This document shows, one piece after another, positions 7,957 through 38,701 of a stretch of DNA of 64,000 nt. Both the position numbers and the translations under genes were made by a program. The stretch lies in assembly GCA_038087875.1 (NCBI GenBank), contig CM075982.1, positions 18,104,001 through 18,168,000 on the forward strand, read 5' to 3'. Numbering within the stretch: the stretch's first letter is position 1; each line of letters opens with the position of its first letter. This DNA comes from Malacoraja senta. Taxonomy: Eukaryota. Under the pieces are notes generated by a model that saw only the letters and a list, made by a program, of their open reading frames with translations, was not told the origin of the DNA and searched no databases.

Positions 7957-8176
7957 ATCCTGTGATCTGTTTGGTGGATGTCTGTGTCTTGGACTGTGTC
8001 TGTCACTCCACGAAGGACCCTTGTGTCCATTCTCTCTGGGAGTCACTGATCTGTTGCGTCGGCCTTGCAGAGGAGATTGACTGGGTTCGTTTGTGTCATT
8101 CTTGGGCTGCCTGGAAATAGCACTGCGTTTGCTTTTGGAATGTGATGTTCTACGCTCTGAAGATGGGCTGTGGGAA
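7957..8176 (-). CDS. SRRM3: SRRM3 coding exon (~exon 11), 220 nt, phase 2-0: SHSPSSERR...SVTPRENGHKGPSWSDRHSPRHRHPPNRSQD
   Basis: ttttatttgttttccag|TTCCCAC...CAGGAT|gtatgt. S/R/P-rich, lies within ORF 7708..8187(-), and is in frame with the previous exon. Confidence 0.87.
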
Positions 8177-9120
8177 CTGGAAAACAAATAAAAGCAAGTG
8201 GCCGATTAAGTGTAACCAATAAGCTCGTTGCTGAGTTCCAACATTGGTCAGTGGGTGAACTTTGATTAGTTTTTAGTCAATGAAGAGTAGAAAGATTGTA
8301 ATATACTGTTGCACACAGTGCATTTGCGAATACAATTCAAGTACATTTTGACCACACTGCAGCCCCTCAATCACTCCACACAGCTTCCTTCATTGTAGTA
8401 CCACCTAATCAGAACGCTATTAAACTTCACCCTTAACCTGTCATGCCACTATTAAATATTAAAAAGTTCATGTGGCAAAATCTGGCACTTGCACGTTAGG
8501 TATTTGTTGATGGTTTATTTTCTCCTATGCTTGATGAACTTAAGACCAAATAATATTGGGATTAAACAATTAACTAAATGCAGATAAATCCTCCATGGCA
8601 TTGCTGTTTTATGAACAATATTGGGGAGGTATTACAGCAAGAAAGCGTTAACTTATCGAAAATGGGTATTATAAGCAAGGCATCTTAATGTTGTGAATTT
8701 TGCCAGTAACTTCACATAAATATCCATGTTTTGGAATTTGATATTTAAATTGTGATATTATATATTTTTGTGTCTTTGCCAATTAAAAAAAAAAATTGTA
8801 ATAAACTATTTGTTTTAATTACAATGTCAGGAATAATCAAAAACAATCAATGGCCTTGGTGACTTTTAAGCTACGAGTGAGTGGCATAGATGGCAATGGT
8901 GACGCCAAGCAGCATTGTGCCCCAGATGCACCCTATATTAAGGGCATTGTCATCTGCCAAAAGTTCAGAGGGATTTTTTAAGTGGAGATGGTTCCAGATA
9001 TCACTGGAATGAGTTGCTGCTGCTTAGGACCTAACTGTTTGGCTCCAGGACCTTGGTTCAGATGAATAGTCTTTACAGGCAGCAGGTTGTCAAGGTGAAT
9101 CCAGGCCTGTGTATCAGTAA

Positions 9121-9215
9121 ATAGACACAAAAAGCTGGAGTAACTCAGAGGGACAGGCAGTATCTCTGGAGAGAAGGAATGGGTGACGTTTTGGGTCGAG
9201 ACCCTTCTACAGAAG
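9121..9215 (-). mobile_element. Penelope-derived mini-element (single arm)
   Basis: atagacacaaaaagctggagtaactcagagggacaggcagtatctctggagagaaggaatgggtgacgttttgggtcgagaccc. Confidence 0.8.
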
Positions 9216-10253
9216 ATCATCTTCTCCTGTTTTGTTGACAGGTTTAAGACCTGCATGTTAATAGAAAGGATGCATGGACGCAATGCAAACCTGACGTGAA
9301 AGCTTGGGGAAAACATTTAATTTAGATCGCTATTGAAAGTATAGGCTGGCAGCTGTAGTTATATCTTTATGTTCTATGCCAATTTAGAACCGTCGGTCTA
9401 GAGATGAGTACACCTGTTAAAACTGCCCTTGCTACACATGATTTGTCAAGATGAAATAAATGGTCAGATAGGATCAAATGGAAAGCAAAATGACCTGGGT
9501 GCCAACATAGCCCATACACATTTTAGATTGATACATTTTGTCCTTTTTCACACTCTGTTGTTATTTATTTACAAAATCATGGTAATATATTAATAGGCCT
9601 ATTAAAAAAAAAAAGTGTGTTAATCAGTTTTAACTATTATGTTAAGGAACAGTGCAATAATAATTTCTCTCTCCTCCTTCCTTTCTCGATTCCTCACACT
9701 TTCTATCTTTTGTCTGTATCTTTCTTACTCTTCATCCCCATTTTTTAAAATCATTCTCAGAACGCATTTACCCATTGCAGCAATCTGCTCTCTAGGTGGG
9801 CTGTAATATAAAGTGCCAAATCACTAAACTTCCAGTATTTCATAAAACAGAATTGGGTGTTACATATTATTTATTCTGTTACAAGTTTTAGACGTTTAAC
9901 AGATGGGAGTTACAAATTAAGAATACTGTAGTGATGTAATCTCATTTTGACTAGGATCATGAAATCGGCAGTGTGGAACCTTTGAAAGCACTGCTGAATA
10001 TCTAATTCTATTAACTGCTGGGTGCTGCCTTGAACAGATGGCCTTTGTGATAAAACTTGTAACGTACTGCAGAACAAGAGTAATATCTAACCAAAATTAG
10101 AAAAGTTCCCATTCTAATTATGAATGGGGATAGGTAATGATGGTAATGTTAACATCAGGGAATTAGGTTTACAGACGGGAAGTCAGAATTTGTATAATAA
10201 CATAACACCTAGTCTGTTAATATTCAGCCGAATCTGTGGCATGTAATACTGAC

Positions 10254-10361
10254 CTCCTTAGAGATTTGGAGGAGCTGCGTATGGACGATGCAGACACACT
10301 GCGGGAGCTGCAACAGCTTCGTGCTTTGTGTGTTTTCCGTGGTGGTGACTCACTGGGTGAC
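10254..10361 (-). CDS. SRRM3: SRRM3 coding exon (~exon 10), 108 nt, phase 2-2: SPSESPPRKTHKARSCCSSRSVSASSIRSSSKSLRS
   Basis: ctctttccctcaacag|GTCACCC...CTAAGGAG|gtcagt. Lies within ORF 10217..10408(-). Confidence 0.88.
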
Positions 10362-13339
10362 CTGTTGAGGGAAAGAGGCTTGCATGAGAAATGGACCACA
10401 CTGAGCAATGTCTTTCCTGAGGATGTTATCAGCAGCGGAAATTTTAGTATAATATAGAATTAGAAAAGAGTATCATTAGCAGACAATCAGAAAACAGCCC
10501 TTCAAGCAGAATCTACCTTTCAATCAGAACACGACTGATTACTTAATGTATCACAGCATTTCATTATTATTTATAATGTAAAAAAATTAATTCTATTAAT
10601 CACACAATTTAAAAAAAAATTATGTTATGTACAGAATGCAAGAATTTAGGCCACATTCCCTTAAATTAGGAAGATTAAAGCATAAATATTTCCTCTGGTT
10701 GAAGAATTTAGAATAAATACATGAATCAGGCGAGATGTCAGGAGGTATTTCACACTAAGAATATTACAAATCTGGAAATTTCTCCTCAAAAAGCTGCTAA
10801 TTCATAAATCTTACCATTTTTCTATTCAAAGGTACTCAAAACCTATCTGATCACTTGTTCATAAACCTCTTTTGTGGTTTAGTATTACATTTGTTTGATA
10901 AGACATCTGCAAAATGCTTTGAGATGTTTCACAACATTAACGGTATTAAAACAAATAGTAGTTGTCTAATCATTACATTTATGAACACTGAACTCCATCT
11001 GCCAGTTGCCTCCATCCATACATTTAGGATTATTGTGCATTGACTATTTGTATTATTGTGCATTGGGTCGGTCTTATCTACAGGTTTATCTACAAACCTG
11101 AAAACTTAGAAGAGTCTCTTTCTTTATGATGATTAAAAGGACAGCTGATAATCCGTATGAAACTGCATGAGGAACCTGAATTCACAACAACATCTCCGCT
11201 GTAGCCATCTCTCACTCATTGTTCCAAAGAAAGGTCTTTCCACAGATCCTGCCTGAGCTACTGGGTGCTTCCAGCTTTTTATTCCCACTCACACAATTTC
11301 TCTTAAATGGTGCAATGTAAAACCCAGATGGATTCCCATAGAATCTTCAAGATAAAAGAAATATAGGTGACCTAACATTTCTGAATTTCTGCATGTTTGC
11401 CCTAATTCTCACCATTGGCAAATTACCTCTGGATCTATCTCTTGCTTCTGGTATACTTTACAACTGCTACATTTTTTGCCTAATCTTCCTTTTTATTGTC
11501 TAAAATAGAGCAGATATAAATGGAAAACAACTTACTGGTTGTTATCCCACTGCATCAAATATCAACGGAGACCAAGATCCAAAGCGTTACAACCAACAAG
11601 GCATTGCACTTTCCTCATGGGGTCTGTTATCAGGGTCACTGACCTTTCAACTTATGAATGTACAAAGGAACTGAAGCCACTTTGGGTACGCTCTAACGCT
11701 CAATAAGTTTGTGGCTGGTGTCCTTCCTTAACTCTATCCTTTGCATTTTCCTACTTTTCAAAATTAACCAAAATGTAATAATCTCTTTCTTGAACATACA
11801 TGACCGAGCTCATGCAAGCCTTTGGGATAGAGAATTCCAAAAAATATCAAATAATTTGAGGTGAACAATTCCTCCTAATCCGTCCTAAATATCAGGTTTT
11901 AATGAATGATCATTGGCCTGAAACATTTACACTATTTTCTCTTAATGTATAAACTCTCATTGAATATGATCATGGTACATCAAGGTGTTCTTGTGTTGCT
12001 GATTCAAGGATAAGTGTTGGCTATACTATAGAGGATGTGATTGTGGAACTAAAGGTAGCCCTTGTAAATTGGCCATGGATCTGGAACATTATCAACTCCA
12101 ACCTGATTTCATACATTATTAATTCAACTGGAGGCACAAGCTACATTTTGCAGTGGGTGGGAGCAATAAAACAAAATGCCAATTAGAACATAGATGCCTA
12201 ATCTCTTGGGATTCATTTTAATTAATCACTGATTTGGAGAAATATTATTATACTGCAATGGATTAATAAAAAATATGTAGTCAGGAAGGCAGTCGAATGT
12301 TTGTGCACAAAACCGTGACTAACCTGAAAATACAGATCAGAATTTATTTTGGTAGCTTTTAAATTATACGTTAATATGTGAATTATTTAGTGGATTGGAC
12401 AAGACTTCTATTTACCAGTACAGAATAAATGCGTTCATTCCATTCACTCCACTGTTAGTGCTGCAATATTTTTAGGTTTACTACATTATTGTGGCTGTTG
12501 TGAAATCAGTCTCACACATTAACTAGTTAAGGTTGTAGGAACATAAAATGGGATTATTAAAGTTATAAATACTGCTGTAATTATTCCAAGTTTACTCATT
12601 AGTGTGCTTAACGCCCTACAAGTTTTAAAGTGATGTCAAACGGGTGAAAAACATTTCAAACATAGGAAAAGAGTAGGCCATTCAATACTTTGAACATGTT
12701 TCATTATTCAATTAGATTGCAGTTGATTGGCACCTTCATTCAATTCCCATGGTTTCATATTACTTAATGCCTTGCTAACATAAATCTCCAGTCTTATCAA
12801 ATTTTAATTGATCTATCCTCAACAACGTCATGAAGGACAGAGTTCCAGATTTTCATTACCATTTAGACAAAGAAGTGCTGTCTAAAATTACACATTATAT
12901 ACGAGAAAGGCATAGTTCTAATTTCACCCACGGGTGTAAACTCTCCTACCAGAGGAAACACTTTCTGTACGTCTAATGAAAATATTTGATCATCTTAAAC
13001 AACTCGATTATATACGCTCTTAATTAATTTCATATGAGAAATATAAGCCTAGCCTAGGAAACCTGTTACCATAATTTTCTATGATTAGGACTGATGCTAT
13101 TTGAGTGAATAAACACTACATGTCCTTCAAGGCTAATATATCCTTACTGAAAATCAGTGTTCAGAACTAAATATAGTAGTACTCTAGATAGTATTTGTAG
13201 AATTCATATGGCTCTTCTTTCTGACACACCCACTCTATCACATGCCTACTCATTTGTCCTTTCCTCCTGTCCTTTATTTCTCTAAAAAGCTACTGATCTC
13301 CAACGTGTCACAGTTTTGACAAAATACTTGATTTTAATA

Positions 13340-13715
13340 GGCATTGAAGAGGTTTACCAGATTGCTGATTGGATTAGAGGGGATTAGTTATAGGAGAGGC
13401 TGGACACCCCTGGAATGTTTTCTCTGGAACGTCAGAGGTTGAGGGATATCTGATAGAGGAATAAAAATTCCGAGAGGCATTGATAGGGTAGACTGTCAGA
13501 TCAAAAGACTAGAAGACTTAGCTTTAAGGTAAGTCAGAGGGGGGAATTTAAAGGTGTGGCAGTTAAAAGATGTTTAGACAGGCACACAGAAAGGCAGAAA
13601 ATGGAGAGATGTGGATCATGTATAGGGAGAGATTAGTTTAAATTGAGATCATAATTGGCACAGACATTGTGGGCCGAAGGGCCTGTTCCTGGGCAGTACT
13701 GATCTGCGTTCTGTG
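13340..13715 (+). mobile_element. CR1 LINE 3' fragment
   Basis: aggtttaccag...ttttctctgga.cgtcagaggttgaggg...gggccgaagggcctgttcct, a typical CR1 C-terminus and 3' UTR. Confidence 0.75.
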
Positions 13716-14004
13716 TGTGCAGGCCATCAACCTGAAATATTATCTCTGATCTCTTGATCACCAATGCAATTTGACCTGCTGAGTATTTACCATTTTTTTC
13801 TGTTATTTTATGGTGGATATGTACCCAACACTAATGTAAGGCAACACTGCAAATAATTTTACAAACTAAATGGGAACTCCATGTACTTTCCCTGTGCAAC
13901 TTAAACTATAAACATGAGGTACATTTTAAATCAACATTACTTGAACTATAACAAAAAATCACCGCAAAATGGAAAGTTAACAAACAAAGTGTAATATAAA
14001 AGAA

Positions 14005-14665
14005 AACAGAACGATGGAAGAACTCAGAATGCACTAATGAGTCAAGCAGCTCCTGCAGAGGCAAAAAATGGAATTTGACGTTTAGGGTCGGGACTGCATC
14101 AAGATTGAGAGGAAATAAAAAAAGTTGCCAGGAAATAACAGCACAAAGTGAGGTGGGACAGAGGCTGGTGGGTGATAGGTGCAACCATTGGTTCATGGGA
14201 GGGGATGATGGGATGAGGTGGGGCGAGGGGAGAATAAGGTGAGAAGAAACCTAGAAGGACAGGTGAGTCTGTGTGGAAGGAGAACACTGGGGTGCTGGTG
14301 TGTGGTGTAGGTTTGGAAATTAGAACAATTATTTTTCATTCCATTGCATTGTAAACTACCAGGCAGAATATGAGTGGTGTTCCCCAAAGTTGCAGCGGCC
14401 ATCTTGAGCTTTTGGTGGCATGGCACGTCAACATTTCCACTCCCACACTGAACTGTCTGCCCTTGGACTTCTCCATTGCTAAGGTCAGGCCAACATCCTC
14501 ATTGGCCTCTATCCCATCTGCCCTCGCACTCCTATTTATTGAAAATCTTTCCTATCCCCTCTCAATCCTGATGCAGGATCTCAACCCAAATCAATGACCC
14601 ACTGAGACCTTCTGCCATTCTAATTTATGTTCTACATTCCAGCATCTGCAGTGTCTTTTGTCTTT
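14005..14665. mobile_element. Old Penelope fragments in inverted arrangement
   Basis: Terminal motif on the minus strand at about 14020-14110 and on the plus strand at about 14560-14665, with a GIY-YIG C-terminal remnant between them. Confidence 0.6.
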
Positions 14666-15263
14666 AAACAAGAAAGCATTGAGCACTATGCTTTATGCTG
14701 GTGTCCAATGAGGCTATTTGTTATTTTGGTTTTGGTTACGTAAATAATTTTGGTTACGCAAATAATTTGAATCCAACATGAAAGACCAAAAGTAACATTT
14801 ACAGCAGGCAAATAAGCTGGTGGAACCTATTCTAGGTAACAAATACATTGTGATGGTGGGCAATAAAATTCCCAATCCCTTTGTGTACTTGCGTCCAATT
14901 GGTCAGGAAAGAACTTTATTCAGTTGGTCAATTTTATGTAACCATTTGATAAGAATAGGTTCTTGAATTTTTATTATTATACATTTATTCAACATTTTAA
15001 ATTAGGCATTAGAACTATAGAAATGAAAAGATAAAGAGAAAAGCTAAAAAGACAAATGTGGGAAACTGAGTTCTACAGGGCTGTGTAACTAGATTATTTG
15101 GCATTATCATGAACTCTGCACCAAACCCTTGTAACAATATATGAATAAGAATCACCATGGTACAACATCTAGCATTCAGGCCATCTCTGTGAGCAAGAAG
15201 CAGCTTATATCAAAGGCTGAATCCCGAGTCCCGCTAGGATAATCATGAATAATTTAAACATAC

Positions 15264-15314
15264 CGCCTTCTTTGTTTGCTTCTGTCTTTGCGTTTGGTTT
15301 TAGGGCTTGTAGAC
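15264..15314 (-). CDS. SRRM3: SRRM3 coding exon (~exon 9), 51 nt, phase 2-2: STSPKTKRKDRSKQRRR
   Basis: ttttctccgtag|GTCTACAAGC...AGAAGGCG|gtatgt. Matches human SRSSKCKRKEKNKEKKR in length and composition. Confidence 0.9.
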
Positions 15315-15989
15315 CTACGGAGAAAATTAATGAATAAAAGTCAGGGGAGTAAAATTATATGACCCAATATGTGTGTAGACTTCCTTAGGAGTACTTTAGA
15401 TTTCAGACTTCCTTCGGAGCAGATTTCAACAGTATGTGTAGTTAAAATAACCTTTCCCCCCCCCCACCAAGAGAATAATACTGCTACTCATTATGATAAA
15501 ATGTGGCAAATTTTGATGAACAATATACTTTACCACAATTTCCTTGCAACACCTGCATGAAGTACTTCCAGGTCAAAGGGGAGTTGCTTCCATTCATGAG
15601 ATGCAGCATTAAATTTCATGAATGGAACAATTCTATTAGGCAACAATTTTAATTGGATTAATGACCACCCATTATGATGGACATTTACCATTTAAATTGC
15701 GACATAATGCACGCAATTAAGATATTCAAGAAGGTATAATTTTTAATTATTCATGCTTAATATCTACAGTAAGTAGTTATTGCACTGAAGCATGGGTACA
15801 CAAAATGTTGGGGCAGGAACAATCAGGGTTTGCTGAAGACAGTGCCAACATATTTTTGTATACAATAGTATAAAACTATTTCTGAACTTCTGAAACACAT
15901 GACTTTAATTTACTGGGTATGTCACCTAATCCTGGAGTCCCCTAATACTTTGAAAATCAAATCAATTCCTATAGAGGAGTTCATAGATG

Positions 15990-17995
15990 AAATGGACAAT
16001 CGTTTAGGATAGCTGAATATAATTAAACCTAGTCACAACATGATTTTACAAAAGGTAAATTATGTTTGGCAAATCCACTTGAATTCTTTGAGGACATAAC
16101 AGAGAGAGTTGATGGAGGAGAACATGTATCTTTAGTGTAAATTCACAAAGGGCATTTGACAAGATGCCACATAAAGGCTTGTGCATAAATTAAAGGCCCA
16201 TAGAACCAGAGAAAGTGTGTTAGAAAGGATTGTAAACTGGCGGTCTCATAGAAAACAGAGATAGACACAAAATGCTGCAGTAACTCAGCGAGACTAGGCA
16301 GCATCTCTGGAGAGAAGGAATGAGTGGCGTTTCAGGTCAAGACCCTTCTTCAGTCTGGCAGGTGCTGATTAGTGGGGTGCCGCAAGGCTCGGTGCTGGGA
16401 CACCAGTTATTTACAAGATATATTAACGATTTAGCCGAGGGAATTAAATGTAACAGCTCCAAGTTTACGAATGACACAAACCTGGGTGGCAGTGTGAGCT
16501 GCAAGGAGAATGCTATGAGGCTGCAGGGTGACTTGGATAGGATGGGTGAGTGGGCAGATGCATGGCAGATCAAAATAATGTGGATAAATGTGAGGTAAAT
16601 GGGTGTGGATGGAAGCATGCAGGTACAGCAGGCAGTGAAGAAAGCTAATGGCATGTTGGCCTTTATTGCGAGACGATTTGAGTTTAGGAGCAAGGAGGTC
16701 CTACTGCAGTTGGACAGGGCCCTGGTGAGACTGCACCTGAAGTATTGTGTGCAATTTGGGTCTCCTAATTTGAGGAAGGACATTATTGCTATTGAGGGAG
16801 TGCAGCATATTTTCACCAAGTTAATTCCCGCGATGGCGGGACTGACATAGGATGAAATAATAGGTCGACTGGGCTTGTATTCACTGGAATTTAGAAGGAT
16901 GAGAGGGAATCTTATAGAAACATATAAAATTCTTAAAGGTTTGGACAGGCTAGATACGGGGAAAAAAATCCCAATGTTGGGGGAGTGCAGAACCAGGGGT
17001 CACAGTTTAAGAAGAAGGGGTAGGCCATTTAGGACCAAGATGAGGAAAAACTTTTCACCCAGAGAGTTGTGAATCTGTGGAATTTACTGCCACATAAGAC
17101 AGTGGAGACCAATTCACTGGATGCTTTCAAGAGAGATTTAGATTTAGCTCTCAGGGCTAAATGAATCAAGGGATATGGGGAAAAAGCAGGAACGGGGTAC
17201 TGATTTTAGGTGATCAGCCATGATCATATTGAATGGCTGTGCTGGCTCAAAGGGCTGAATGGCCTACTCCTGCACCTATTTTTCTCTGTTTCTATGTTTC
17301 AATTTTGTGGCTATCTTTCATTTAAACAAGCATCTTCAGTTCTTTCCTACTCATAGAAAACAGAGTTCAAATAAATATGTACTTTTTTCACCGGAAGGAG
17401 GTAACTAGTGGAAAACCTCAGGGAGCAGTTCTTGGCCGCAATTGTTCACTATTTATATTAATGATCTGAAGGGAGATGTTGTAAGCAAAATTTCCAAATT
17501 TGTTGATGGTACAAAAAATAGACGGAAGGCCGTATTATGATAGTGCAACAGGATACAAGTATATCGAGTGAATGGGCAAAATACTGGCAGATGTAGTTTA
17601 ATGTGCGGAAGCTGTATACATTGGTAAGAGGCAGGTTATTATCTAAATGGCGAGAGACTGGAAATGATTGAAGTTCAGGGAGACATAGGTGTAATAGTAA
17701 GAGAACTAAAAAATGGGTTAGGATCTCAATGAAGGGACTACAAATGAGAAGGCAAACAACATTTTGTCTTTCAAGGGATTGGAGTTTAAAAAAGGTAAGT
17801 TTTGTTGCCGCTTTATAGGATAATGATGAGGCCTCACCTGGATTACTGCATACAGTTTTAGTCCACTGAACTAAAACTGAAGAAATAGTAACTAGAGACA
17901 TTACAAAAGATATTCGCTGGCTGATTCCGGGAATGAGAGGTTGTCCTAACAATTTAGACTAAATAGCATGGGCCTATATTCCTTGGAGTTTAAAT
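15990..17995 (+). mobile_element. Nested insertion: old CR1 RT, split by a Penelope-derived mini-element (16261-17349), itself split by a younger CR1 (~16356-17300)
   Basis: Exact 16-bp TSD ctcatagaaaacagag at 16245-16260 and 17350-17365. Young CR1 translates as SGVPQGSVLG...YINDL...LQGDLD and KKANGMLAFIAR...YSLEFRRMRG. Confidence 0.88.
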
Positions 17996-22500: not shown

Positions 22501-22638
22501 AGTCCTGGGACAAAGAAGATTTCTGCAGCATAGACGACCAGCCGATGCCCATAATCCCAATAGCACTAGTTGTGTGATCATTGACAGTAGGCAGCTAATG
22601 AACCTTTACAATGGTATCCAATGATTTTCTATGCTTAC

Positions 22639-22675
22639 CTATGCTTCCTCTTTTTTTCTGGAACCTGAATCAGAC
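22639..22675 (-). pseudogene. SRRM3: Disrupted SRRM3 exon (~exon 8, SDSGSRKKRKH): acceptor reads GG instead of AG and there is one extra A (37 nt instead of 36)
   Basis: Minus strand reads cttatacgg|GTCTGATTCAGGTTCCAGAAAAAAAGAGGAAGCATAG|gtaagc. The donor is intact. The A7 run shifts the frame to ...AGA AAA AAA GAG GAA GCA TAG. Confidence 0.8.
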
Positions 22676-23154
22676 CCGTATAAGATGAGAAGTGACTGAG
22701 TGTAGGGGTTTGCTCGATGTAGTCTTGAGCACAATGCTCTTTGATTGCTCCACAAAGAAAATACTTGCAAAATATATTTAAGATTCCATGTATCAAGGAT
22801 ACTTAAACAAGTGGTTTATTTCAAAGAGATTAAGACATTCTCCTAGTTTTTTTTATCACCGGATCACAACATTAGGCAATTATTGTGGGTCACTTTTCCC
22901 ATTTTAGAAGACATAAATACAAAGACCATTTTCTTTAGTAAGAACAATTAACACGAGCATTTGGAAAAACCAATGATGCACAATGTTCATTTGGATATCA
23001 AAGAGCCACTTCACAATTTCTAAGTCCTACCTTTAATGTTCTGAGAAGAAAGGTTACTGACCTGAAATGATCACCATCTCATTCCACAATTGCTGCCTGA
23101 CCTGCTGAGTATTTCCAACATTTTAGATTTAATATATAATTTTGAATGTGACTT

Positions 23155-24727: not shown

Positions 24728-24796
24728 CTGTCTCTCTTGTGTTTCTTCCCACTCTTCTTTTTTCTCTCTTTCCGTGATGATGAAGAACTTTCGCAA
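24728..24796 (-). CDS. SRRM3: SRRM3 coding exon (~exon 7), 69 nt, phase 2-2: CESSSSSRKERKKKSGKKHKRDR
   Basis: tttttcttcatag|TTGCGAA...GAGACAG|gtggag. Matches human CGSSSPLRKKKKSVKKHRRDR. Confidence 0.9.
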
Positions 24797-26690: not shown

Positions 26691-26779
26691 AGCATTTAAT
26701 GACTTGCTCATTCAAGCATTTCGATAGGACAGTGTCACTTTTTCTATAGATGACCTCCACTTTGACCTTCTCACACTTA

Positions 26780-27016
26780 AGGGCCTGTCCCACTTTCACG
26801 ACCTAATTCACGACCTCTGCCGAGTTTGCCCTTGACTCATACTCGCAACATGGTCGTCACGAGGTCGTAGGAGGTCGTAGGTAGGTCATAGCAGGCCGTG
26901 ATGGTAGTCGTAGGTACTCATGGCATCAAGTAGGTCGGGCCGTTTTTCTCGCATGATGAAAAATGTCCACGAGAAAAAGAGGTTGTGAATTAGGTCGTGA
27001 AAGTGGGACAGGCCCT
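26780..27016. mobile_element. PIF/Harbinger-type MITE (237 bp, 39-bp TIRs, TTA target-site duplication)
   Basis: Left TIR agggcctgtcccactttcacgacctaattcacgacctct; the right TIR is its reverse complement with one mismatch. TTA at 26777-26779 and 27017-27019. Internal GTCGTAG repeats and no coding capacity. Confidence 0.9.
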
Positions 27017-27020
27017 TTAC

Positions 27021-27050
27021 CTTCTTCCTGATCCAGCTTTCCTCTTTTTG
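27021..27050 (-). CDS. SRRM3: SRRM3 30-nt exon (~exon 6), phase 2-2: KKRKAGSGRS
   Basis: aattgccag|CAAAAAGAGGAAAGCTGGATCAGGAAGAAG|gtaaag. In frame with both neighbours and the same length as the human KKRRLESECS exon as I recall it. Confidence 0.85.
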
Positions 27051-27930: not shown

Positions 27931-28179
27931 GCCTTTCCTTATTTTATAAAGTTATTGAGCAAATCAGTTAACATTGACAAATGAATTATTTAAAATTGGG
28001 TGGATTTATGTACATTTTACTGTTTTCTAGGGATGGTATTTCACCTGCTGAACATTGCAAAAACAGATTACGTTTTCAAATGTCATCATTTGAATCAGAA
28101 GCATTGTGAAACTCCCGATGATCTGATAAAGTGCAGCATTATGCATGCATCATCCCAGAATTAAGTAGGGGCAATTATA

Positions 28180-28975: not shown

Positions 28976-29950
28976 AGTCTGATTTATACTGTATGGAAAC
29001 AGGCCCTGCATCCAACTCATGCTGACAAGATGCCTACCACAGCTAGTTCCATTTGCCTGCATTCGGCCCAAATCCTGCTAAATCTTTCCTGTCTGTCTAC
29101 CTGCCAAAATGTCTTTTAAACATCGTAATTGTACCTGCTTCTACACTTCCTCTTGCAGTTCATTTCGTACATCCATCATTCCCTCAGCTTGTCCCTCCGG
29201 ATCTCTTTAAATCTTCCTCCTCGCTCTCCAGTTTTAGATCAATTTTCTGGGCAAAAGATTGTGACATTCACCTTATCTATGCCCCTAATGATTTTATATA
29301 CCTCCAAGGTTACCCCTCAGCCTCCTCCAAGTGATCCTGTCCTGGCAACATCTTTGTAATTTTTTTTAGACTCTTTCTAACTTAATGAGATCCTTCCTAG
29401 AGTTAGATGACTAGAATGGCACATTGTATAGCTGCAACATGACATTCTAACGCTTGCAGTCAATGCCTTGACCAATGAAGGTATGTGTGCCCGTCACTGT
29501 TCTGTGTTCCCGATCTCAAGGAACTATGTACTTGCAACCCGAGGTCTCTTTGTTCTACAGCATATTCCATGGTCCTGACATTAAACGTGCGAATCCTGCC
29601 TTGGGTTAACCTCCCAAAATGTAACACACTTCGCACTTATCCACGTTAAATTTCATCTGCCATTCCTTGGGCCACATTCACAGTTGATCTAGATCCTGAT
29701 GTAATTTATAAATTATAAATTTCCATCAAGTCTCCCATCAGGCTCCAACATTCCAGTGAAAACAATGCAAATTTGCCCAACTTCTCCATATAATTAATAT
29801 TCTCTAATTCAGGCAGCATCCTGGTAAACTTCTTCTGCACCCTCGACCAAAGCCTGCACTTCCTTCTTATAAAGAAGCAACCACAACTGTATAGTACTCC
29901 AAATGTAGTCTAACTAAACTTTTATAACACTGCAACATGACTTCCTGATC
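28975..29950 (-). mobile_element. CR1 fragments
   Basis: Reverse CR1 3' UTR (ggaaacaggccc...cctgcattcggccc) and RT C-terminus (cccaaaatgtaacac...aaatttcatctgccatt). Confidence 0.8.
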
Positions 29951-29994
29951 TGATACATTTTTTCAGCCGTCTCTGTTTTTATTTAACAAAATTA

Positions 29995-30406
29995 TACTCT
30001 GGAATTTAGAAGGATGAGAGGGTATCTTATTGAAACATATAAGATAATTAAGGGATTGGACACGCTAGAGGCAGGAAACATGTTCCCGATGTTGGAGGAG
30101 TCCATAACCAGGGGCCACAGTCTAAGAATAAGGGGTAGGCTATTTAGAACAGTGATGAGGAAAAACGTTACCCAGAGAGTGGTGAATCTGTGGAATTCTC
30201 TGCCTCAGAAGGCTGTGGAGGCTAATTCTCTGGATGCTTTCAAGAGAGAGTTAGATAGAGCTCTTAAAGATAGCGGAGTCAGGAGATATGGTGAAAAGGC
30301 AGGAACGGGGTACTGAATGTGGATGATCAGCCATGATCACAGTGAATGGCGGTGCTGGCTCGAAGGGCCGAATGGCCTACTCCTGCACCTATTGTCTATT
30401 GTCTAT
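29995..30406 (+). mobile_element. Young CR1 3' end
   Basis: MRGYLIETYKIIKGLD...TRGHSLRIRG...VVNLWNSLPQKAVEA and an attgtct tail. Confidence 0.92.
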
Positions 30407-31394
30407 AATTGCAAAGGCTGGGTTCCTTTAGCTCTTGCCTGCCTGACTGCATTTAAACCCTCACGTCCCTGATCACTAAGCAGACCAATATAATCTATAG
30501 GAGGGGTGTTATTAGGTTTGAATGCACTCCTGGACCAAAGTATCTGTCAAACTCCCTCCTCAATAGCCTGCAAGGTCTGCGAAACCTCTGATTTGTTGCT
30601 CCTAATGATACACATATTTTTAACACATCTAGTTTTCCAGGATGGCGATTACAGAACTATACTAAAGCCTCTTAAAAGGTTGATTAATTTGCGTGCACAA
30701 AAGTGGCTTGTAATTCAATGAAATACAATTGGGCACTGTAGCTTTAGGGTAATCTGTTTAAAATTTAAAAAGAGTTGATAACATCGATATAATAAAGGCA
30801 TTTCCTCTTTTGTAGAATCAAGAATGATTCTTAGATCATTTGGGATCAAAATCAAGATTTTTTTTTCACCCTGGTTGTAGAAATCTAGAATCTCTTTTAT
30901 TAAAATGCTGTGAATACTTGGTCAATTGGAGCTATCAAGTCAGATTTATAAATTCCTGTTCAGTAAGCAATCAAGAAATATGGATCCAAGGTAATTGGAC
31001 CCAAGATGCAGGTCATGCATGATCCATTTTTATTTTTTAAAGTCTTTTATTTTCATAAATTGAATATCTATAAATAGTTTTTACAGATATATATGTAGTT
31101 TTATACAATATATTTATCAATGTCCAGTCACAGTAACCAAACACAAAAATCTGCAAAATACGGGGTCGGAAAAGGAACAGGTTATGTGGTCAAAACTAGT
31201 GTTGAAAGGATTATACCTGCACTTCAAGGGAGATTCCACACTTAGCAGTACTCTCTGAAGAAAGGTGACTTTTATTTCCATAAATAAAACGTTTGAATCA
31301 AATTTTCTCCCCTTGTAAATCTTTTTTCAAGAGTTAATTTATGGGATTTTTTTCATACATTTAAAGAACTATCAAATATAAGAAACTAAAAACA

Positions 31395-31610
31395 GCAGGA
31401 ACTGCAGATGTTTTTTTTTAAAGAGACACAAAGTGCTGGAGTAACTCAGCAGGTTAAGCAGCATCTCTGGAGAACATGGATAGGTGATGTTTCGGTTCTG
31501 GATGCTTCTCCAGTCTCTGAATCTGCTGAAGGGTCCTCACCTGAAACGTCCATGCTCTCCAAAGATGCTGCCCGACCCACTGAGTTACTCCAGCACTTTG
31601 TGTCCTTTCT
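31395..31610. mobile_element. Palindromic Penelope-derived mini-element
   Basis: Inverted arms gtgctggagtaactcagc ... gagttactccagcac. Confidence 0.8.
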
Positions 31611-32270
31611 TTATATAAGAAACAGAATATTTTTTGCCTGCTTTTATTGCCTGCTGTTTAATTTTCACATCTTCAAAGTCTGAAATGCAAAAGGAATTAT
31701 AGAGTCACAATTGGTCTTCGAACATTCAGCTAGTGTCAGCTGAATTGGAATCCACTGTTAGGTGTCACATAAGAAAGGATTTTGAAATAAAACAGTTAAT
31801 AATTTTGAAAACTGTGCCCCCTATGCAGTTTCATCTGCAAAACTAGGTGAGACGATGTTACCTCTTGGAACCTTACTAAAGCTTAATACAAACCTCCACC
31901 TGTCAAACATTGCATTCCATTTCAGCAAGATTTTTTGGAAATATGCACCAAAAATTCAACAAGCATCAAGAAAAAAGACAGATGGTTTCCTCTTGATGAA
32001 TGCTTTGTACATGGATTAATCATTCCAACAAGGAATAGCACTTAAAAGAGATGCTATGATGCATCTCAGTAGGTCTACTCTAGGCTCAGAACCTGAAATG
32101 ACACCTCAAAGGAACGTCATATTTTTGAAATACACAAAAAACCCCAACTTTGTTTAATTTAAGAACACAATCTACTTGTATGGTAGGTATGGACAGTTTG
32201 TTATGACTAATCGTGAAGCTTCCAATCCTTTTTATGGCACCCTTATTGTACTACACAAAAAGACATTTAC

Positions 32271-32351
32271 CGGATTTTGTAGTGCCCCGATTTCTTCTTC
32301 TTCTTCTTCTTGGGTGGTGGTGAGGGAGAACTGCTTGATTTCCTTTTCATA
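32271..32351 (-). CDS. SRRM3: SRRM3 coding exon (~exon 5), 81 nt, phase 2-2: MKRKSSSSPSPPPKKKKKKKSGHYKIR
   Basis: Acceptor ctgaag|TATG and donor ATCCG|gtaaat. Contains the SPPPKKKKKKK motif of SRRM3. Confidence 0.88.
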
Positions 32352-33227
32352 CTTCAGTGGCATTATTCGCATGAGAAAAATTATTAAGATATAAACACAA
32401 ATAAGTTACTTAATGTAGGATAAGAAATCTTTACATAGGATATACAATATATAATCAGACCATATTCTGCCTGCAGATAAGATGCACCCTCTCTTTAACT
32501 ACTCTATCATCATATTAATTCTCGATCATGGAAGACATGTCACACATGTAAACTCTCAATTAATTCATCAAGACAATATAGGTTTGTCAAAGTGATGCAC
32601 ACAGCTGTCTAGACAGTTAGGTATTGTGTCAGAGCAAAAAACACATATATTGATATACACAAGATTGGTTCCCTCCTTTTTTCATGATAAGGATCAAAAT
32701 CCCAGACAACAAAAGGTTTGTTACTGAGCAGAGACCAACTGATTCCCCACAGCAGAGGAAGGCGAATCTGCTTCAGACACATCCTATCTCTGTGTCCCCT
32801 TTAAAAATATTTTCGTGTGTGCAAATTAATAGACAAGTGCCACGGCATGTAAAGGATTCAAGCCTCATTTTTGTGCTGCATATTATACTGACCTGCGCCT
32901 TCCCAAATATTGAGCTGTGAACACTAGCAGCACAGAAACCAAGAGGAAAAGAGATGGTTTCACTTAACCTTTTGAATTCATTGTTGCCCAGCAGGAGATT
33001 TATGCTCCTGTTATTTATTCATAAAGGAAATACAAATCTGTTCTATGTTCGGAGCTTTTAATGTTTACCGGTGACCTCACCTCGAGACCCAATCTTCATG
33101 AGGGACTGTGCTTGATGAAGTGAACAAAAATTTTAAAGCTGATATCAGTAAAAGTATTGCACATCAGTAAAACTTTCAGTGACTATAAACATGACACAAA
33201 CTTCTTTGTTTCTGCATTGTGTAATTT

Positions 33228-34375
33228 TTCCATACCAGGACATCCAAGATGTCCTCCTTCTTTTGGGAATGGGGGTTCCACTCTCCCATCATAGATGACG
33301 CCCTCACTCGTGTCTCCTCGGCACCCCGCAGCTCCACCCTTGCCCCCTCCCCCGAGTCACAACAGAGACAAACTCTCCCTAGTCCTTGCCTTTCACCCCA
33401 TCAGCCATTGCATATAACATATAATCCACCAAAGTTTTCGCCACCTCCAACAGGATCCCAACACTAGTCACATCTTCCCATCTCCACCCCTTTCTGCTTT
33501 CCGCAGAGACCATTCCCTCCACAATTCCCGGGTTAACTCATCCCTTCCCACCCAAACCACCCCCTCCCCAGGTACCTTCCCCTGCAACTGCAGAAGATGC
33601 AACACCTGTCCCTATTCCTCTTCCCTCCATTCTGTCCAGGGACCCCAGCAGTCCTTTCAGGTTAGGCAGAGGTTCACTTGCACCTCCTCCAACCTCATCT
33701 ATTGTATCCGTTGTTCAAGATGTGGACTCTTATACATTGACAAGACCAAAGGTAGACTGGGCAATCGTTTCACTGAAAACCTTCGCTCAGTCTGCCTGAA
33801 CATACCTGATCTCCCGGTTGCTACACACTTTAATTCTCATTCCCATTCCTACATAGACCTTTCTGTCCTTGGTCTCCTCCATTGTCTAAATGAGGCTAAA
33901 GGCAAATTCGAGGAACAGCATTTCATATTTCGCTTGGTCAACTTCCAACCCAGTGGTATGTATATTGATTTCTCTAACTTCAGGTAGCCCCGGCATTCCC
34001 TCTCTCTATCCCTCCCCACCCAAGTCGCACTAGCTTCTCGTTTTCACCTAACACGCAGCTAACAATGGCCTGTTTCCTTTATCATCATTACCTTTTTGCA
34101 CATCTTTCATTCATTGTTCATTATCTCTCTACATCCCTTATCTCCCTTGCCCCTTACCAGTCTGAAGAAGGGTCTTGACCCAAAATGTCACCCATTCCTT
34201 CTCTCCGCCTGTCCTGCTGAGTTACTCCAGTTTTTTGTGTCTAACTGCAGATGCTGGTTTACACAAAAGGACACAAGGTGCTGGAGTAACTCAGCAGATC
34301 AACACAGAACACAGATAGGTGATGTTGTGGATCCCTTCTTCAGACTGAAGAAGGGTCCCGACCTGGAATGTCACT
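33228..34375 (+). mobile_element. Penelope-like retroelement 3' half with GIY-YIG endonuclease and terminal repeats
   Basis: SNLIYCIRCSRCGLLYIDKTKGRLGNRF...PVATHFN...EEQHFIFRL...QPSGMYIDFSNFR, followed by the same ctgaagaagggtc terminal unit found in the mini-elements. Confidence 0.92.
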
Positions 34376-34469
34376 ATTATACAATGCAGGTTAGTTATGC
34401 TATTGGGGTTGTTTATTACTCTCAGCTAATTTGTTCCTGGTATTTTCAGTATTTATCATCAAAATGGTA

Positions 34470-34625
34470 AAATGTTAAGAAACATTTAGACAGGTACATG
34501 GATAGGACAGGTTTAGAGGAATATGGGTCAAATGATGGCAGGTGGGACTAGTGTAGATGGGACATGTTGGCCGGTGTGGGCAACTTGGGCTGAAGGGCTT
34601 GTGTCAACGCTGTAAGACTGTATGA
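34470..34625 (+). mobile_element. CR1 3' end
   Basis: aagaaacatttagacaggtacatggataggacagg...gggctgaagggcttgtg. Confidence 0.8.
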
Positions 34626-35594
34626 AAAGAAATATATCCTAAACTGTAAGATATTTAAAAGAGGGACTGAGAGCACGGTTCATTAAAGGTGATGGTAGAA
34701 ATAGCCATAGAAAAGGTGAATGGGAGTCTGGGTTTTCTGTGTGGAGTGATTACATATCAAAGCAAAGTGATGAGAAAATTCTGCAAGATATTGGTTTGGC
34801 TGCTTTTGGCAGCACAACATTTTTCTTAGAGGTCCATCATAGGAGGTCCTTAGAGGTCCATCATATCAGAGCCATGTACAGGGTAGTGTAACAGTGAGAT
34901 TAATTGTATGAGGTTCTGCTATTAGACCAGCAACCGAAAGATCCTAATTGCAAGTTTCAGCATGGTAAGGCATGAAATCAACTTTTTACATAGTTGATAA
35001 TGTGTTTGTTACCCTTCATATGTTGGTTCACTATTGTTGTGTAAGAGTGAGAACCTGCCTTTCCTACTGGGCCCATCTATGTGCTCTTAGCATAGGTTAA
35101 TGGTTAAAAGAATAAAAAGGGGAATTGATGGGCATGTGTGAGGCAGGGTAAGTTTCAGGGGTACAGGAATGGGGAGTTGCTTTTCAGATACTGCCATTAT
35201 CCCTATGAGCCAAATTGGCTCTTTCCATGTTGTTTTAAGTTTAAGATAAACTAAATGTGAGAAAGTTCAGTGCTGGTCAGTGGTGCTTCACTTGGACCAC
35301 CGCTGATTGATTAGGCCTGGCTTGTGATAGCTGCAGATGGTGAAACTGTTAACTGAAGCAACATCTAAAGTGCTGCACAGTGCTTACTAAGGCAAAGTCT
35401 TGTACTTTACCAAGGACACCGTGCACCACTATCTGTAGTCTCATGACCCAGTAAATCAGGATGAGACTGGGGAATTAATAAAGAGATATAAGGAAATGGA
35501 TGGGATATAAGGACATTTGTTTTTGGTCTTTAAGGTGTCAAGTTTATGGGGATAAAGCAGGTAAGTGAAGTTGAAACCAAGATCTTATTGGGCA

Positions 35595-35825
35595 TAGAGT
35601 GCTGGAGTTGCTCAGCGTTTCAGGCAGCATCCCAGGATAGTATGTATAGGTGACGTTTCGAGTCAGGACCCTTCTTCGGACTGATCGTTGATCAAAGATC
35701 AGTCTGAAGAAGTGTCCCAACCCGAAACATCACCTATCCCTGTTCTCTTGAGACGCTGCCTGACCTACCGAGCTACTGCAGCATTCTGTCTTCTTTTGTA
35801 AACCAGCATTTGCAGTTCCTCGTTT
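35595..35825. mobile_element. Palindromic Penelope-derived mini-element
   Basis: Inverted arms around cttcttcgga...agtctgaagaag. Confidence 0.8.
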
Positions 35826-37194
35826 CTTTATCAGATCAGGCAAAATGTTATTTAATGGCCGAGCAAGCTCAAAGGCCAATGTGGCCCACTCTTCCTCCAA
35901 TTTCTTAAGTACATGTAACTATTGTCACTTAACCATGTGAATACAATTGGATGCATTGTTTGATTCATAAATTTGATGCCTGATTTTCAATACTTAAGAA
36001 GCATATTGAAAAATCTAACACTAACAGTTTGATCTATTTACGATGAGACTCAGGCTCACTTGAAACCTAAAGTACTAGCATTTGAGCAAACAAATATGTT
36101 GGAAATAAGGCAGAGTATCAGAAATAGTACGCAATGTTTGTACTCAAACTCCCACCTGTCTATTATTGTACATGTTGCTTGGGAAATTGACAGCAAAATA
36201 TACACATATTAAATAAGAAAATGCAACAAAGAAAGGAGAGCTATTGTGGGAAAAGGATTAAGACTCATGGAAGCTAGTTAATTTAGTAAGAAACAGACAA
36301 GTCTGCAATAATTAAAAAAGCAACGCTGAGCAGCGACTATCGAGCATTGCTGCCTTGTTTTTTACTCCCTGGAAGCCTACTGTTAATGTTTCAATAGCTA
36401 TTGCATTTGATTAAATAAATTAGATAGCTTTGGTACTATAAAATCTGCACACATTCCATTTGAAGAAGGTTCCAAAGTCCAACTGTACCATTTCTTACAC
36501 CTCACAACACTTAAAATGTTTCTCACACAATCGAAGCATAAAATTAAAATCCCATGATAATTGCAAGGCGGTGATGATTCACACTAAGTGAATGACTCAC
36601 AATGCCCTTCATCACCATGGAATTTATATTTATAGGCACTGAAGCTCAGTGAGACTGCAAGAATGTCTATTATGCTGTTGTAAAAAATTGACTCTAGCTG
36701 CATGTTATAATTTTACCAGTGAGTGTCCTTTAAATTTCCAGTTCGTTTTCTATCTTGAGTTATAGCCAGGGCTTGAAAAATTAAGGTTTGATTTCCATTA
36801 ACTAACTGGGAATACATACATACATAGCACAAGATCACTTTTTATATCTATCCACTGCATTTGTCATTAATGCCATGTACTGTAAAATAGACAAATTCTC
36901 AGATTTTTCCATCCCTCTCCCACAGATGTAAATTCATCCATTATCAATGCCTAATCTGCTACTCTGTCCCTAACAATAAAAAGCACAGTACTTCTGCACC
37001 ACAGTGATGATTAAGAAGACATACATTTCACATTGATGGATTAGATTGGATAAAGGACAGTTATTTTTTTTTTACGAAGGCTTTTGAGGGATATTGGCCA
37101 AATGCAGGCAAATGGGACAAGCCCAGGGGACAAGTAAAGGCCAAAGGGCTTGTTTCCATGTCATATAGCTCTAGGACTATGTCAGTATTTATTC

Positions 37195-37510
37195 ATATTT
37201 TAAATCTCTATTTTTGTATTCTTTGTAAATATTTGATTAGAGTATAAATGTAAATAATTTGGTGTACATATAGCTGCTGGTGTACATATGGTGTACATAT
37301 AGCTGCTAAATTTGTATATGATAATTATAAGCAGTTGAATAAGGGGTGGGAATTAATAAGGTTTGGCTTCTTCCTGCTCCTTTTCAGACACATACGATTT
37401 CATTTATTTATAGATATTGTTTATGACACTTTATAAATATTCTTGTTTTGTTTTTTTGTATGCTGTTTCACACTTGCTTTTAGTTCTTTTATTCTGTTTG
37501 AAATAAATAT
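37195..37510 (+). mobile_element. Probable L1/Tx1-type LINE 3' end
   Basis: AT-rich UTR with ggggtgggaattaataaggtttggcttcttcctgctcc, ending in gaaataaat. Confidence 0.45.
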
Positions 37511-38574
37511 ATATATTTTTTAAATTTAAAAAAAGGAACTTTCACATGCACTTGGAACAGATCACCCATTATCTAACTAAGTGGCAGAATGGGCTCAATG
37601 TACTGTAGTTGGTGGACACCTGAAATATTGCATATTAAATGGCTACATTTATGCAGACATCAGGACCTCTAGAGATATAAAATTTCAAATTACCAACGAG
37701 TTGTCTTTGGAGATAACAAGCAAGGTCACGGGAAGCAAGCGGATGGGAAAACTCATGACCTTGGCTTATAATCAGCATTCATCGCTGGTCATTTTTAATT
37801 CTTTAATCCATCACGTAGAGTACAAGACAGCAATAACTATTTCTCTGAGCATTCGCTGATTTTGTGGGTGCGTCATCATACCATGAAGCAGCTCGGATAG
37901 CAATCTTTGGTGAGTCCAGTAAGAAAAATGTTTGGGGTTTCACCTGCATCTTACATATTATTATATGTATCAGTGCAGAAGATGGAAGGAGGCAGCTGTG
38001 GGATGTCCATATTGGAAGTCATTGGACATTCTGTGCTCATCAGGATGTTACTACCGCAGTAAGGGCAATGTGCCATAGGTACACCAGCAAAGAATGCATG
38101 ATGATCTATAAAGCATTCTAGCCACACAACATTATGCTTCAATAGAAAGAGCATGAGGAGTATGAGGAAGATCCTTGCATTGTCATTTTGGTGCATTGAA
38201 AGAATAGCCACCAACAAAGAACATCAAATATCTTAATCTTACAAGTGCTCATATGTCTTCATTTAGGGCTTGCACATTATGCATGTAGCTATGAATGGAT
38301 GTCATTCAAATGTCATATGCAAGGAGAGAAGATATCTTCTACTATGCCTTTTGGTAGCACAGCCAGAGGATTTTATGTGCATTGCAGTCTTTCTCAAGTT
38401 AATGCATGTACAGACTACACGCATGCAGTATTACACCTAGCAGAGACCATTTTGCAACCTCTGTGGCAGAGGAGACAAAGATTGCAAAGAATGTTGCAGA
38501 AATTACAGCATTCTAGACAGAAATAAGCACCACTCCTTTTGCATTGCCTGCATCATGCACCTTTCTTTTCTTAC

Positions 38575-38701
38575 TGTGTCTGTGTCTCTGGCTTCTGTAT
38601 CCTGGACAATAACTTTGATGCTGGGCAATGCGGTTGCTGACAAAATTTCTTGTTGATTATCAACAGGTAACCCTTCTAGTTGATGAACAGTCCTTAATGA
38701 T
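38575..38701 (-). CDS. SRRM3: Candidate upstream SRRM3 exon (~exon 4); frame and 3' boundary unresolved
   Basis: gctttctgcag|ATCATT...GACACA|gtaaga gives 127 nt. One frame is open throughout (SLRTVHQLEGLPVD...). Another frame ends YCPGYRSQRHRH, reminiscent of human CPASCYRGHRGY. An alternative donor AAG|gtgcat at 38561 gives a frame-compatible 141 nt. Confidence 0.4.

What the first reader, a model, noticed from the sequence alone, without database searches (positions are those of the whole stretch)
7957..38701. Possible erosion or remodelling of SRRM3 in this lineage
Seen: three exon-level anomalies in one gene, namely the dead exon at 22639, the MITE-hit donor at 27020 and the frame-ambiguous candidate exon at 38575. 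Six other exons remain open with GT-AG ends and compatible phases. Established: SRRM3 and SRRM4 redundantly drive neural microexon inclusion through the eMIC domain. Inference: this is either early pseudogenisation buffered by SRRM4, or trimming of the basic K/R/S-rich region in a still functional gene.
Basis: inference. Interest (0 to 1): 0.7.

Follow-up and report, generated by a model that had tools for sequence, protein, structure and literature searches.

The report
Skate SRRM3: one exon lost, gene intact
The middle of the neural splicing-factor gene SRRM3 in this skate-like fish has one small broken exon and a jumping element beside another, but the remaining exons look intact and conserved, so this is ordinary local remodelling of a floppy protein region, not a dying gene.

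Summary
The window holds the central, minus-strand part of srrm3. Seven exons (81, 30, 69, 36/37, 51, 108 and 220 nt) match the SRRM3 exon series of turtle and catfish and the protein of the electric ray Narcine (91% identity).

- **Broken exon, confirmed.** The 36-nt exon at 22639-22675 has GG in place of the acceptor AG. It also has one extra A in an A-run, which creates a TAG.
- **Transposon at the donor, confirmed.** A 237-bp MITE with a TAA target duplication sits inside the donor of the 30-nt exon. GT is kept; U1 pairing falls from -12.5 to -6.8 kcal/mol, within the range of the gene's other donors.
- **Third anomaly, not established.** The stretch at 38575-38701 has no similarity to SRRM3. 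It is one of 17 such open AG..GT stretches in the window.

Skipping the broken exon keeps the reading frame. So does the nearest upstream AG, which would give an open 57-nt exon. Both affected exons are absent from annotated SRRM3 proteins of other vertebrates. A relative-rate test shows no acceleration (3 against 4 unique changes).

Trimming of a disordered basic region in a working gene is favoured over pseudogenisation. The cwf21 and eMIC exons lie outside the window and could not be checked. Other notes of this scan already flagged the broken exon and the transposon.

The parts
32271..32351 (-). 81-nt poly-lysine exon of srrm3 (MKRKSSSSPSPPPKKKKKKKSGHYKIR), phase 2-2
   Evidence: tblastn 74-80% identity to Callorhinchus, turtle and gar SRRM3, E down to 9e-11. 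AG/GT ends. Same 81-nt exon in turtle and catfish loci.
27021..27050 (-). 30-nt exon (KKRKAGSGR), phase 2-2; optional in other vertebrates
   Evidence: About 24 of 30 nt match the turtle exon by eye (alignment printed). The peptide matches Callorhinchus KKRKPGCER. Present in 44 orthologue proteins and absent in 45.
26780..27016 (.). 237-bp MITE inserted at positions +2 to +4 of the 30-nt exon's donor; TAA duplications at 27017-27019 and 26777-26779
   Evidence: 40-nt terminal inverted repeats, 98% complementary. 31-nt end found twice in the window against 0 expected. TSD and excision reconstruction. RNA hairpin of -117.5 kcal/mol, z -7.0, with the stem starting at +4 of the 5' splice site.
24728..24796 (-). 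69-nt exon (CESSSSSRKERKKKSGKKHKRD), phase 2-2
   Evidence: 96% identity to Narcine residues 115-139, E 1.6e-9. AG/GT ends.
22639..22675 (-). Relic of the 36-nt exon (ancestral SDSGSRKKRRHR): acceptor GG at 22676-22677, extra A in the run 22651-22657, resulting TAG at 22639-22641, donor GT intact
   Evidence: side by side with the 36-nt exons of turtle and catfish. The exon is present in about 114 of 121 SRRM3 proteins.
22639..22695 (-). Possible remodelled 57-nt exon using the nearest upstream AG (22696-22697); open and in phase, reads SHFSSYTGLIQVPEKKRKHR
   Evidence: the only one of 7 upstream AGs within 90 nt that gives an open, in-phase exon. Pyrimidine fraction 0.56, between those of the poly-K (0.44) and 30-nt (0.61) acceptors. 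Not supported by any transcript.
15264..15314 (-). 51-nt exon (STSPKTKRKDRSKQRR), phase 2-2
   Evidence: 94% identity to Narcine 151-168. AG/GT ends.
10254..10361 (-). 108-nt exon (SPSESPPRKTHKARSCCSSRSVSASSIRSSSKSLR), phase 2-2
   Evidence: 89-94% identity to Narcine 168-205, E 1e-14. Same 108-nt exon in turtle and catfish.
7957..8176 (-). 220-nt exon (SHSPSS...PPNRSQD), ends in phase 0. Lacks 9 residues (27 nt, junction near 8085/8086) that Narcine and Callorhinchus have
   Evidence: phmmer E 1.7e-24, 88% identity. tblastn E 2.6e-36 with a 9-residue gap. Three-way alignment.
38575..38701 (-). 127-nt AG..GT stretch proposed as an exon; not supported
   Evidence: Only one open frame, and including it shifts the frame to a stop in the 51-nt exon. 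Profile rank 267 of 3159. No nucleotide similarity. One of 17 such stretches. Not repeated within the window.

Best explanation
This is the central, intrinsically disordered K/R/S-rich part of a working srrm3 gene in a batoid (skate-like) fish. In this lineage one small symmetric exon (36 nt, SDSGSRKKRRHR) has lost its acceptor AG and gained a 1-nt insertion, so it can no longer be used in its ancestral form. The mRNA most likely joins the 69-nt exon directly to the 51-nt exon, which removes 12 basic residues in frame.

A young MITE landed on the TAA inside the donor of the neighbouring 30-nt exon. Its target duplication rebuilt GTAA, so the donor survives in weakened form. That exon is optional in other vertebrates in any case. 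A further 27-nt in-frame deletion shortened the 220-nt exon.

Shown here: the lesions, the reading frames, the exon homology and the equal substitution rates. Inferred: the splicing outcome, and that the gene as a whole is functional.
For: - The exon series and phases are the same as in turtle and catfish srrm3.
- With the broken exon skipped, there is one continuous 186-codon frame.
- All 12 splice sites of the other six exons are canonical.
- Identity to Narcine SRRM3 is 91%, and Narcine SRRM3 carries cwf21 and SRRM_C.
- Relative-rate test: 3 window-unique against 4 Narcine-unique changes in 150 columns, p = 1.
- The only frameshift and the only splice-site lesion both fall in the 37-nt relic, not in the other 559 nt.
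- A few annotated products in frogs, a tree shrew and a thrush lack the 12-residue exon. The 30-nt exon is absent from 45 of about 92 orthologue proteins, including Narcine X2.
- The donor after the MITE keeps GT, and its U1 pairing (-6.8 kcal/mol) lies within the range of the gene's other donors, -3.2 to -8.5.
- The eMIC domain, not the central region, is reported as necessary and sufficient for microexon splicing (PMC8797185).
Against: - There is no transcript evidence.
- The cwf21 and eMIC exons are outside the window and were not seen.
- No nucleotide sequence from another cartilaginous fish could be fetched, so dN/dS and the dating of the lesions were not possible.
- The relative-rate test rests on only 7 informative sites.
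- The 12-residue exon is kept in about 114 of 121 SRRM3 proteins, so losing it may carry a cost.
- The MITE hairpin starts at +4 of the donor and might hinder U1 more than the pairing energy suggests.
Confidence: 0.6

Rival explanations
1. The exon is remodelled rather than dead. The acceptor has moved 20 nt upstream to the nearest AG, and the 1-nt insertion in the A-run compensates for the 20 extra bases. The result is a 57-nt in-frame exon that keeps the ancestral KKRKHR end and replaces SDSGSR with HFSSYTGLIQVPE.
For:: the first AG upstream gives an open exon of 57 nt (a multiple of 3) in the correct phase at both ends. The six AGs further upstream do not. The 3' half stays in the ancestral frame with only one residue changed. 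The donor is strong, with U1 pairing of -9.4 kcal/mol.
Against: The chance that the nearest AG is in frame and open is about 0.27 (my own estimate: one frame in three, times the odds of no stop in 7 codons), so this is not significant. Its pyrimidine tract is mediocre (0.56). The new residues come from the former pyrimidine tract and are unlike SRRM3. The tool for fetching gene loci returned no DNA for Narcine or Callorhinchus, so it could not be checked whether this AG is old.
Confidence: 0.2
2. Early pseudogenisation of srrm3, buffered by srrm4. On this reading the broken exon, the transposon at the donor and the deletion are the first hits in a gene that is no longer needed.
For: Several lineage-specific changes lie in one 30-kb stretch. 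The functional domains were not seen in the window.
Against: All changes preserve the reading frame. Six exons and 12 splice sites are intact. There is no excess of amino-acid change against Narcine. If the other 559 nt had decayed at the rate of the 37-nt relic, several frameshifts would be expected, and none is seen. An unchecked scan note (s1-200022) describes a REST-site array just upstream of the gene's start codon that is shared with two sharks.
Confidence: 0.1
3. The lesions are an assembly error, or a rare haplotype of the sequenced individual, and the species normally has the intact 36-nt exon.
For: The extra base lies in a 7-A homopolymer, a typical site of consensus errors. Only one assembly was seen.
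Against: The AG to GG change is a substitution outside any homopolymer, and two independent errors within 40 nt are unlikely. The neighbouring exons show no such problems.
Confidence: 0.1

Closest known systems
SRRM3 of other jawed vertebrates (Narcine bancroftii isoform X2, Callorhinchus milii, Gopherus evgoodei, Pangasianodon hypophthalmus)
   Same: Same order, sizes and phases of the central exons (81, 30, 69, 36, 51, 108 and a long exon). Identity is 91% to Narcine over 150 residues. The same poly-lysine and basic patches are present.
   Different: The 36-nt exon has a GG acceptor and a +1 frameshift. Nine residues (RKPCCARCS in Narcine) are missing from the long exon. A MITE sits in the donor of the 30-nt exon. 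No counterpart of the acidic/Cys exon of bony vertebrates was found, and it is also absent from the Narcine X2 and Callorhinchus proteins.
PIF/Harbinger-type (Tourist-like) MITEs
   Same: Short (237 bp), non-coding, with long terminal inverted repeats and a 3-bp TAA target duplication. That TAA/TTA is the usual target of this superfamily is established knowledge, not tested here.
   Different: Only one copy lies in this window. The family, its copy number and any autonomous partner were not examined. The insertion point, inside a 5' splice site that the duplication rebuilds, is unusual but has no special mechanism behind it.
Lineage-specific loss of symmetric cassette exons in disordered protein regions
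   Same: A small exon of a multiple of 3 nt, in a low-complexity basic region, is lost through a splice-site mutation, and the frame is preserved.
   Different: This exon is kept in nearly all vertebrates sampled. A compensated alternative form of 57 nt is also possible.

Membership tests
SRRM3 (vertebrate serine/arginine repetitive matrix protein 3) | Closest relatives by sequence are SRRM3, not SRRM2 or SRRM4 | tested here: met
   The single hit at E<=0.001 in 1.84 billion representatives is Narcine SRRM3. Nearly all of the 120 listed hits to it are named SRRM3 or are unnamed products, and nearly all carry PF08312, mostly together with PF15230. A few partial bird proteins carry an SRRM2 label.
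SRRM3 (vertebrate serine/arginine repetitive matrix protein 3) | Central exon series with SRRM3-specific poly-K and basic patches, with the same exon sizes and phases | tested here: met
   Exons of 81/30/69/36/51/108 nt map one to one onto the turtle and catfish srrm3 loci L001 and L002.
SRRM3 (vertebrate serine/arginine repetitive matrix protein 3) | N-terminal cwf21 domain | tested here: inconclusive
   No match in the window by motif search or by a profile of 61 orthologues. A scan note places the start codon about 69 kb beyond the window end. The flanks are not readable here.
SRRM3 (vertebrate serine/arginine repetitive matrix protein 3) | C-terminal eMIC (SRRM_C) domain | tested here: inconclusive
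   No match in the window to a profile of 104 orthologues or to Narcine residues 287-611. The domain must lie beyond the window start if it is present.
PIF/Harbinger-type MITE | Terminal inverted repeats and small non-coding size | tested here: met
   40-nt arms at 98% complementarity, 237 bp.
PIF/Harbinger-type MITE | 3-bp TAA/TTA target-site duplication | tested here: met
   TAA on both sides. Excision gives a clean AAG|GTAAGT site.
PIF/Harbinger-type MITE | Multi-copy family related to an autonomous Harbinger element | not tested
   There is one copy in the window, and no repeat library or genome-wide search was available.
Unitary pseudogene | Disabling lesions in constitutive exons and relaxed constraint | tested here: not met
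   Lesions are confined to one skippable exon. The other exons are open with canonical splice sites. There is no rate acceleration. Only the central third of the gene could be tested.

The most novel reading that the evidence does not exclude
The two 'lesions' of the 36-nt exon are a compensated pair. A shift of the acceptor 20 nt upstream together with a 1-nt insertion would create a new in-frame 57-nt exon. That exon recruits the old pyrimidine tract as coding sequence and keeps only the ancestral KKRKHR end. This would be a clean natural example of exon remodelling by a compensated frameshift in an otherwise deeply conserved exon of a master splicing regulator.
Probability: 0.2. Interest if true: 0.4.

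Novelty: new member of a known kind. Interest (0 to 1): 0.25.

Why it matters
SRRM3 is a master regulator of neural and photoreceptor microexons, so real decay of the gene in a vertebrate lineage would be notable. The evidence points the other way. The changes are in-frame trims of a disordered basic region that other vertebrates also vary. Microexon activity is reported to reside in the eMIC domain (PMC8797185).

The case is a tidy illustration of two things: how a symmetric mini-exon dies, and how a TAA-targeting transposon can land inside a 5' splice site and rebuild it through its own target duplication. It does not open a new question.

Tried and rejected
- **cwf21 and eMIC in the window.** Motif and profile searches found nothing significant.
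- **More cartilaginous-fish SRRM3 proteins.** Full-length, region-limited and fragment-length searches gave only Narcine X2 and Callorhinchus.
- **Genomic DNA of Narcine or Callorhinchus srrm3.** Narcine is not on record, and the Callorhinchus gene range is too long to fetch. Two metagenome scans with exon patterns found nothing. dN/dS and dating of the lesions were therefore not possible.
- **The 38.6-kb candidate as a decayed copy of the acidic/Cys exon.** I first thought its 3' end read like ...CP..YR..HRH in phase with the next exon. That was a frame-counting slip of mine. Profile searches in all frames rank it 267 of 3159, and the nucleotide alignment scores below shuffles. The idea is dropped.
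- **Two weak profile hits elsewhere.** The hit at 42853-42927 has no splice sites and a stop follows at once. The hit at 63296-63400 lies in repeated DNA.
- **Other acceptors for the broken exon.** By my own frame count on the sequence, AGs inside the exon would give 26-nt or 19-nt exons that are out of frame or hit the TAG.
- **Pfam on ten other long ORFs of the window.** No families matched.
Full report
**What is in the window.** The window has no N. K/R/S-rich open stretches lie on the minus strand. The longest, 7957-8175, was searched against 1.84 billion representative proteins. It gave a single hit, P0001 (E 1.7e-24, 88% identity). P0001 is SRRM3 isoform X2 of the electric ray Narcine bancroftii, with cwf21 (PF08312) and SRRM_C/eMIC (PF15230). 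The hits to P0001 are nearly all named SRRM3 or are unnamed products carrying these same domains, so the gene identity stands.

tblastn of P0001, Callorhinchus SRRM3 (P0012) and bony-vertebrate SRRM3s places exons at these minus-strand positions:

| Exon | Coordinates | Length |
|---|---|---|
| poly-K | 32271-32351 | 81 nt |
| 30-nt exon | 27021-27050 | 30 nt |
| 69-nt exon | 24728-24796 | 69 nt |
| relic of 36-nt exon | 22639-22675 | 37 nt |
| 51-nt exon | 15264-15314 | 51 nt |
| 108-nt exon | 10254-10361 | 108 nt |
| long exon | 7957-8176 | 220 nt |

I fetched the srrm3 loci of a tortoise (L001) and a catfish (L002). Both have the same series: 126/129, 81, 30 (tortoise only), 69/72, 36, 51/54, 108 and a long exon. 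All the small exons are symmetric (phase 2 to phase 2), so any of them can be skipped in frame.

Neither the cwf21 region nor the eMIC region, nor Narcine residues 287-611, is encoded in the window. An earlier scan note (s1-200022, unchecked) puts the start codon about 69 kb beyond the window end. Other notes call the genome skate-like.

**Anomaly 1, the 36-nt exon.** Side by side with tortoise and catfish, the homology is plain. Both of those have ...ag|GTC...AG|gt with exactly 36 nt. The window has ...tacgg|GTCTGATTCAGGTTCCAG-A7-GAGGAAGCATAG|gtaagc, which is 37 nt. Two things follow: the acceptor AG is GG, and one A has been added to the A-run.

tblastn accordingly finds SDSGSRKK in one frame and KKRKHR in the next. 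The TAG before the donor is a consequence of the shift, not a third lesion. Without the extra A, the exon would differ from Narcine and Callorhinchus (SDSGSRKKRRHR) by one residue, so the damage is young.

The exon is present in about 114 of 121 SRRM3 proteins that have the flanking anchor. A few annotated products (two frogs, a tree shrew, a thrush) join the neighbouring exons directly. Skipping it in the window gives one uninterrupted 186-codon frame; including it gives stops.

The nearest upstream AG (22696-22697, 20 nt upstream) would give a 57-nt exon. That exon is open and in the correct phase at both ends, and it reads SHFSSYTGLIQVPEKKRKHR. The 20 added bases plus the 1-nt insertion make 21. 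None of the six AGs further upstream does this.

The prior chance of this for the nearest AG is about 0.27, so it proves nothing. It does mean that 'dead' and 'remodelled' cannot be told apart without cDNA. Tortoise and catfish have no AG in the 30 nt before this exon.

**Anomaly 2, the transposon.**
- **Element.** A 237-bp element at 26780-27016 has 40-nt inverted ends at 98% complementarity. It is flanked by TAA on both sides.
- **Effect on the donor.** Taking it out with one TAA gives AAG|GTAAGTGT. The present donor is AAG|GTAAAGGG. The element therefore landed on the TAA at +2 to +4 of the 5' splice site, and its own duplication rebuilt GTAA.
- **U1 pairing.** Predicted pairing with the U1 5' end drops from -12.5 to -6.8 kcal/mol. 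The gene's other donors span -3.2 to -8.5.
- **Hairpin.** As RNA the element folds into a hairpin of -117.5 kcal/mol whose stem begins at +4. This could reduce access further.
- **The exon itself.** The 30-nt exon is old: about 24 of its 30 nt match the tortoise exon by eye, and Callorhinchus has its peptide. It is nevertheless absent from 45 of about 92 orthologue proteins, including Narcine X2, ray-finned fishes and amphibians. Even full loss of this exon would mimic forms annotated in other vertebrates.

**Anomaly 3, the candidate at 38575-38701.** The coordinates and the AG/GT ends are right. However:
- Only one frame is open.
- The stretch is 127 nt, so including it shifts the frame and gives a stop in the 51-nt exon.
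- A profile of the acidic/Cys exon from 45 bony-vertebrate proteins does not find it in any frame, with best rank 267 of 3159.
- Nucleotide alignment to the tortoise and catfish exons scores no better than shuffles. That test has little power, because those two exons do not align with each other either.
- The window contains 17 AG..GTRAG stretches of 100-160 nt with an open frame.
- Narcine X2 and Callorhinchus proteins have no such exon.

It is not established as part of the gene.

**Is the gene decaying?** Three internal tests argue against it.
1. The one frameshift and the one splice-site lesion both fall in the 37-nt relic, and none falls in the other 559 nt or 12 splice sites.
2. The other window-specific change is the loss of 9 residues that Narcine and Callorhinchus share. 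It is a clean 27-nt in-frame deletion.
3. With Callorhinchus as outgroup, the window has 3 unique substitutions and Narcine 4 in 150 aligned columns, at 91% identity. The retained part therefore evolves as slowly as in a species whose SRRM3 has both domains.

These tests are small and cover only the middle of the gene. According to PMC8797185, the eMIC domain is necessary and sufficient for microexon splicing. That fits tolerance of trimming in the central region.

**What could not be done.** No DNA from another cartilaginous fish could be obtained. There is therefore no dN/dS, no dating and no transcript evidence.

**Verdict.** Two of the three anomalies are real and precisely described, and the third is unsupported. 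The favoured reading is lineage-specific, in-frame trimming or remodelling of the disordered basic region of a functional srrm3. This is an ordinary kind of event in a well-known gene.

Noticed in passing
window 7897-7956 (-), intron just after the 220-nt exon; L001 and L002 at the same junction: The donor GAT|GTATGTAG and about 15 nt after it are conserved between this fish, tortoise (GAT|gtacgtatgctcttc) and catfish (GAT|gtatgtattctcctc). Read in frame, the intron gives D|VCSLF. Callorhinchus P0012 (no eMIC) ends ...QD|VCSLF..., a cyprinid product ends ...ND|VCSLL..., and bird products end ...SD|VRRLF.... Many annotated short, eMIC-less SRRM3 products therefore run through this same weak donor (U1 pairing -3.2, the weakest in the gene). 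This may be a conserved intron-retention or alternative-end isoform.
   Followed up: partly
window 8085/8086 (-): A 27-nt in-frame deletion relative to Narcine and Callorhinchus removes a Cys-rich patch (RKPCCARCS in Narcine) from the 220-nt exon.
   Followed up: partly
window, about 20 sites, e.g. 2909-3041, 4885-5116, 9112-9222, 31387-31624, 44144-44376, 46200-46332: A short interspersed repeat of roughly 100-240 bp occurs about 20 times in the window. LINE-like fragments with a shared ...LYSLEFRRMRG...KGLD... peptide also recur (16851-17069, 29987-30313, 45829-46227). None of the srrm3 exons lies in repeated DNA.
   Followed up: no
P0001 against window exons 32271-32351 and 27021-27050: The Narcine isoform X2 protein goes straight from ...EHHV to CESSSS. 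It skips both the poly-K exon and the 30-nt exon, which suggests these are alternative exons in batoids.
   Followed up: no
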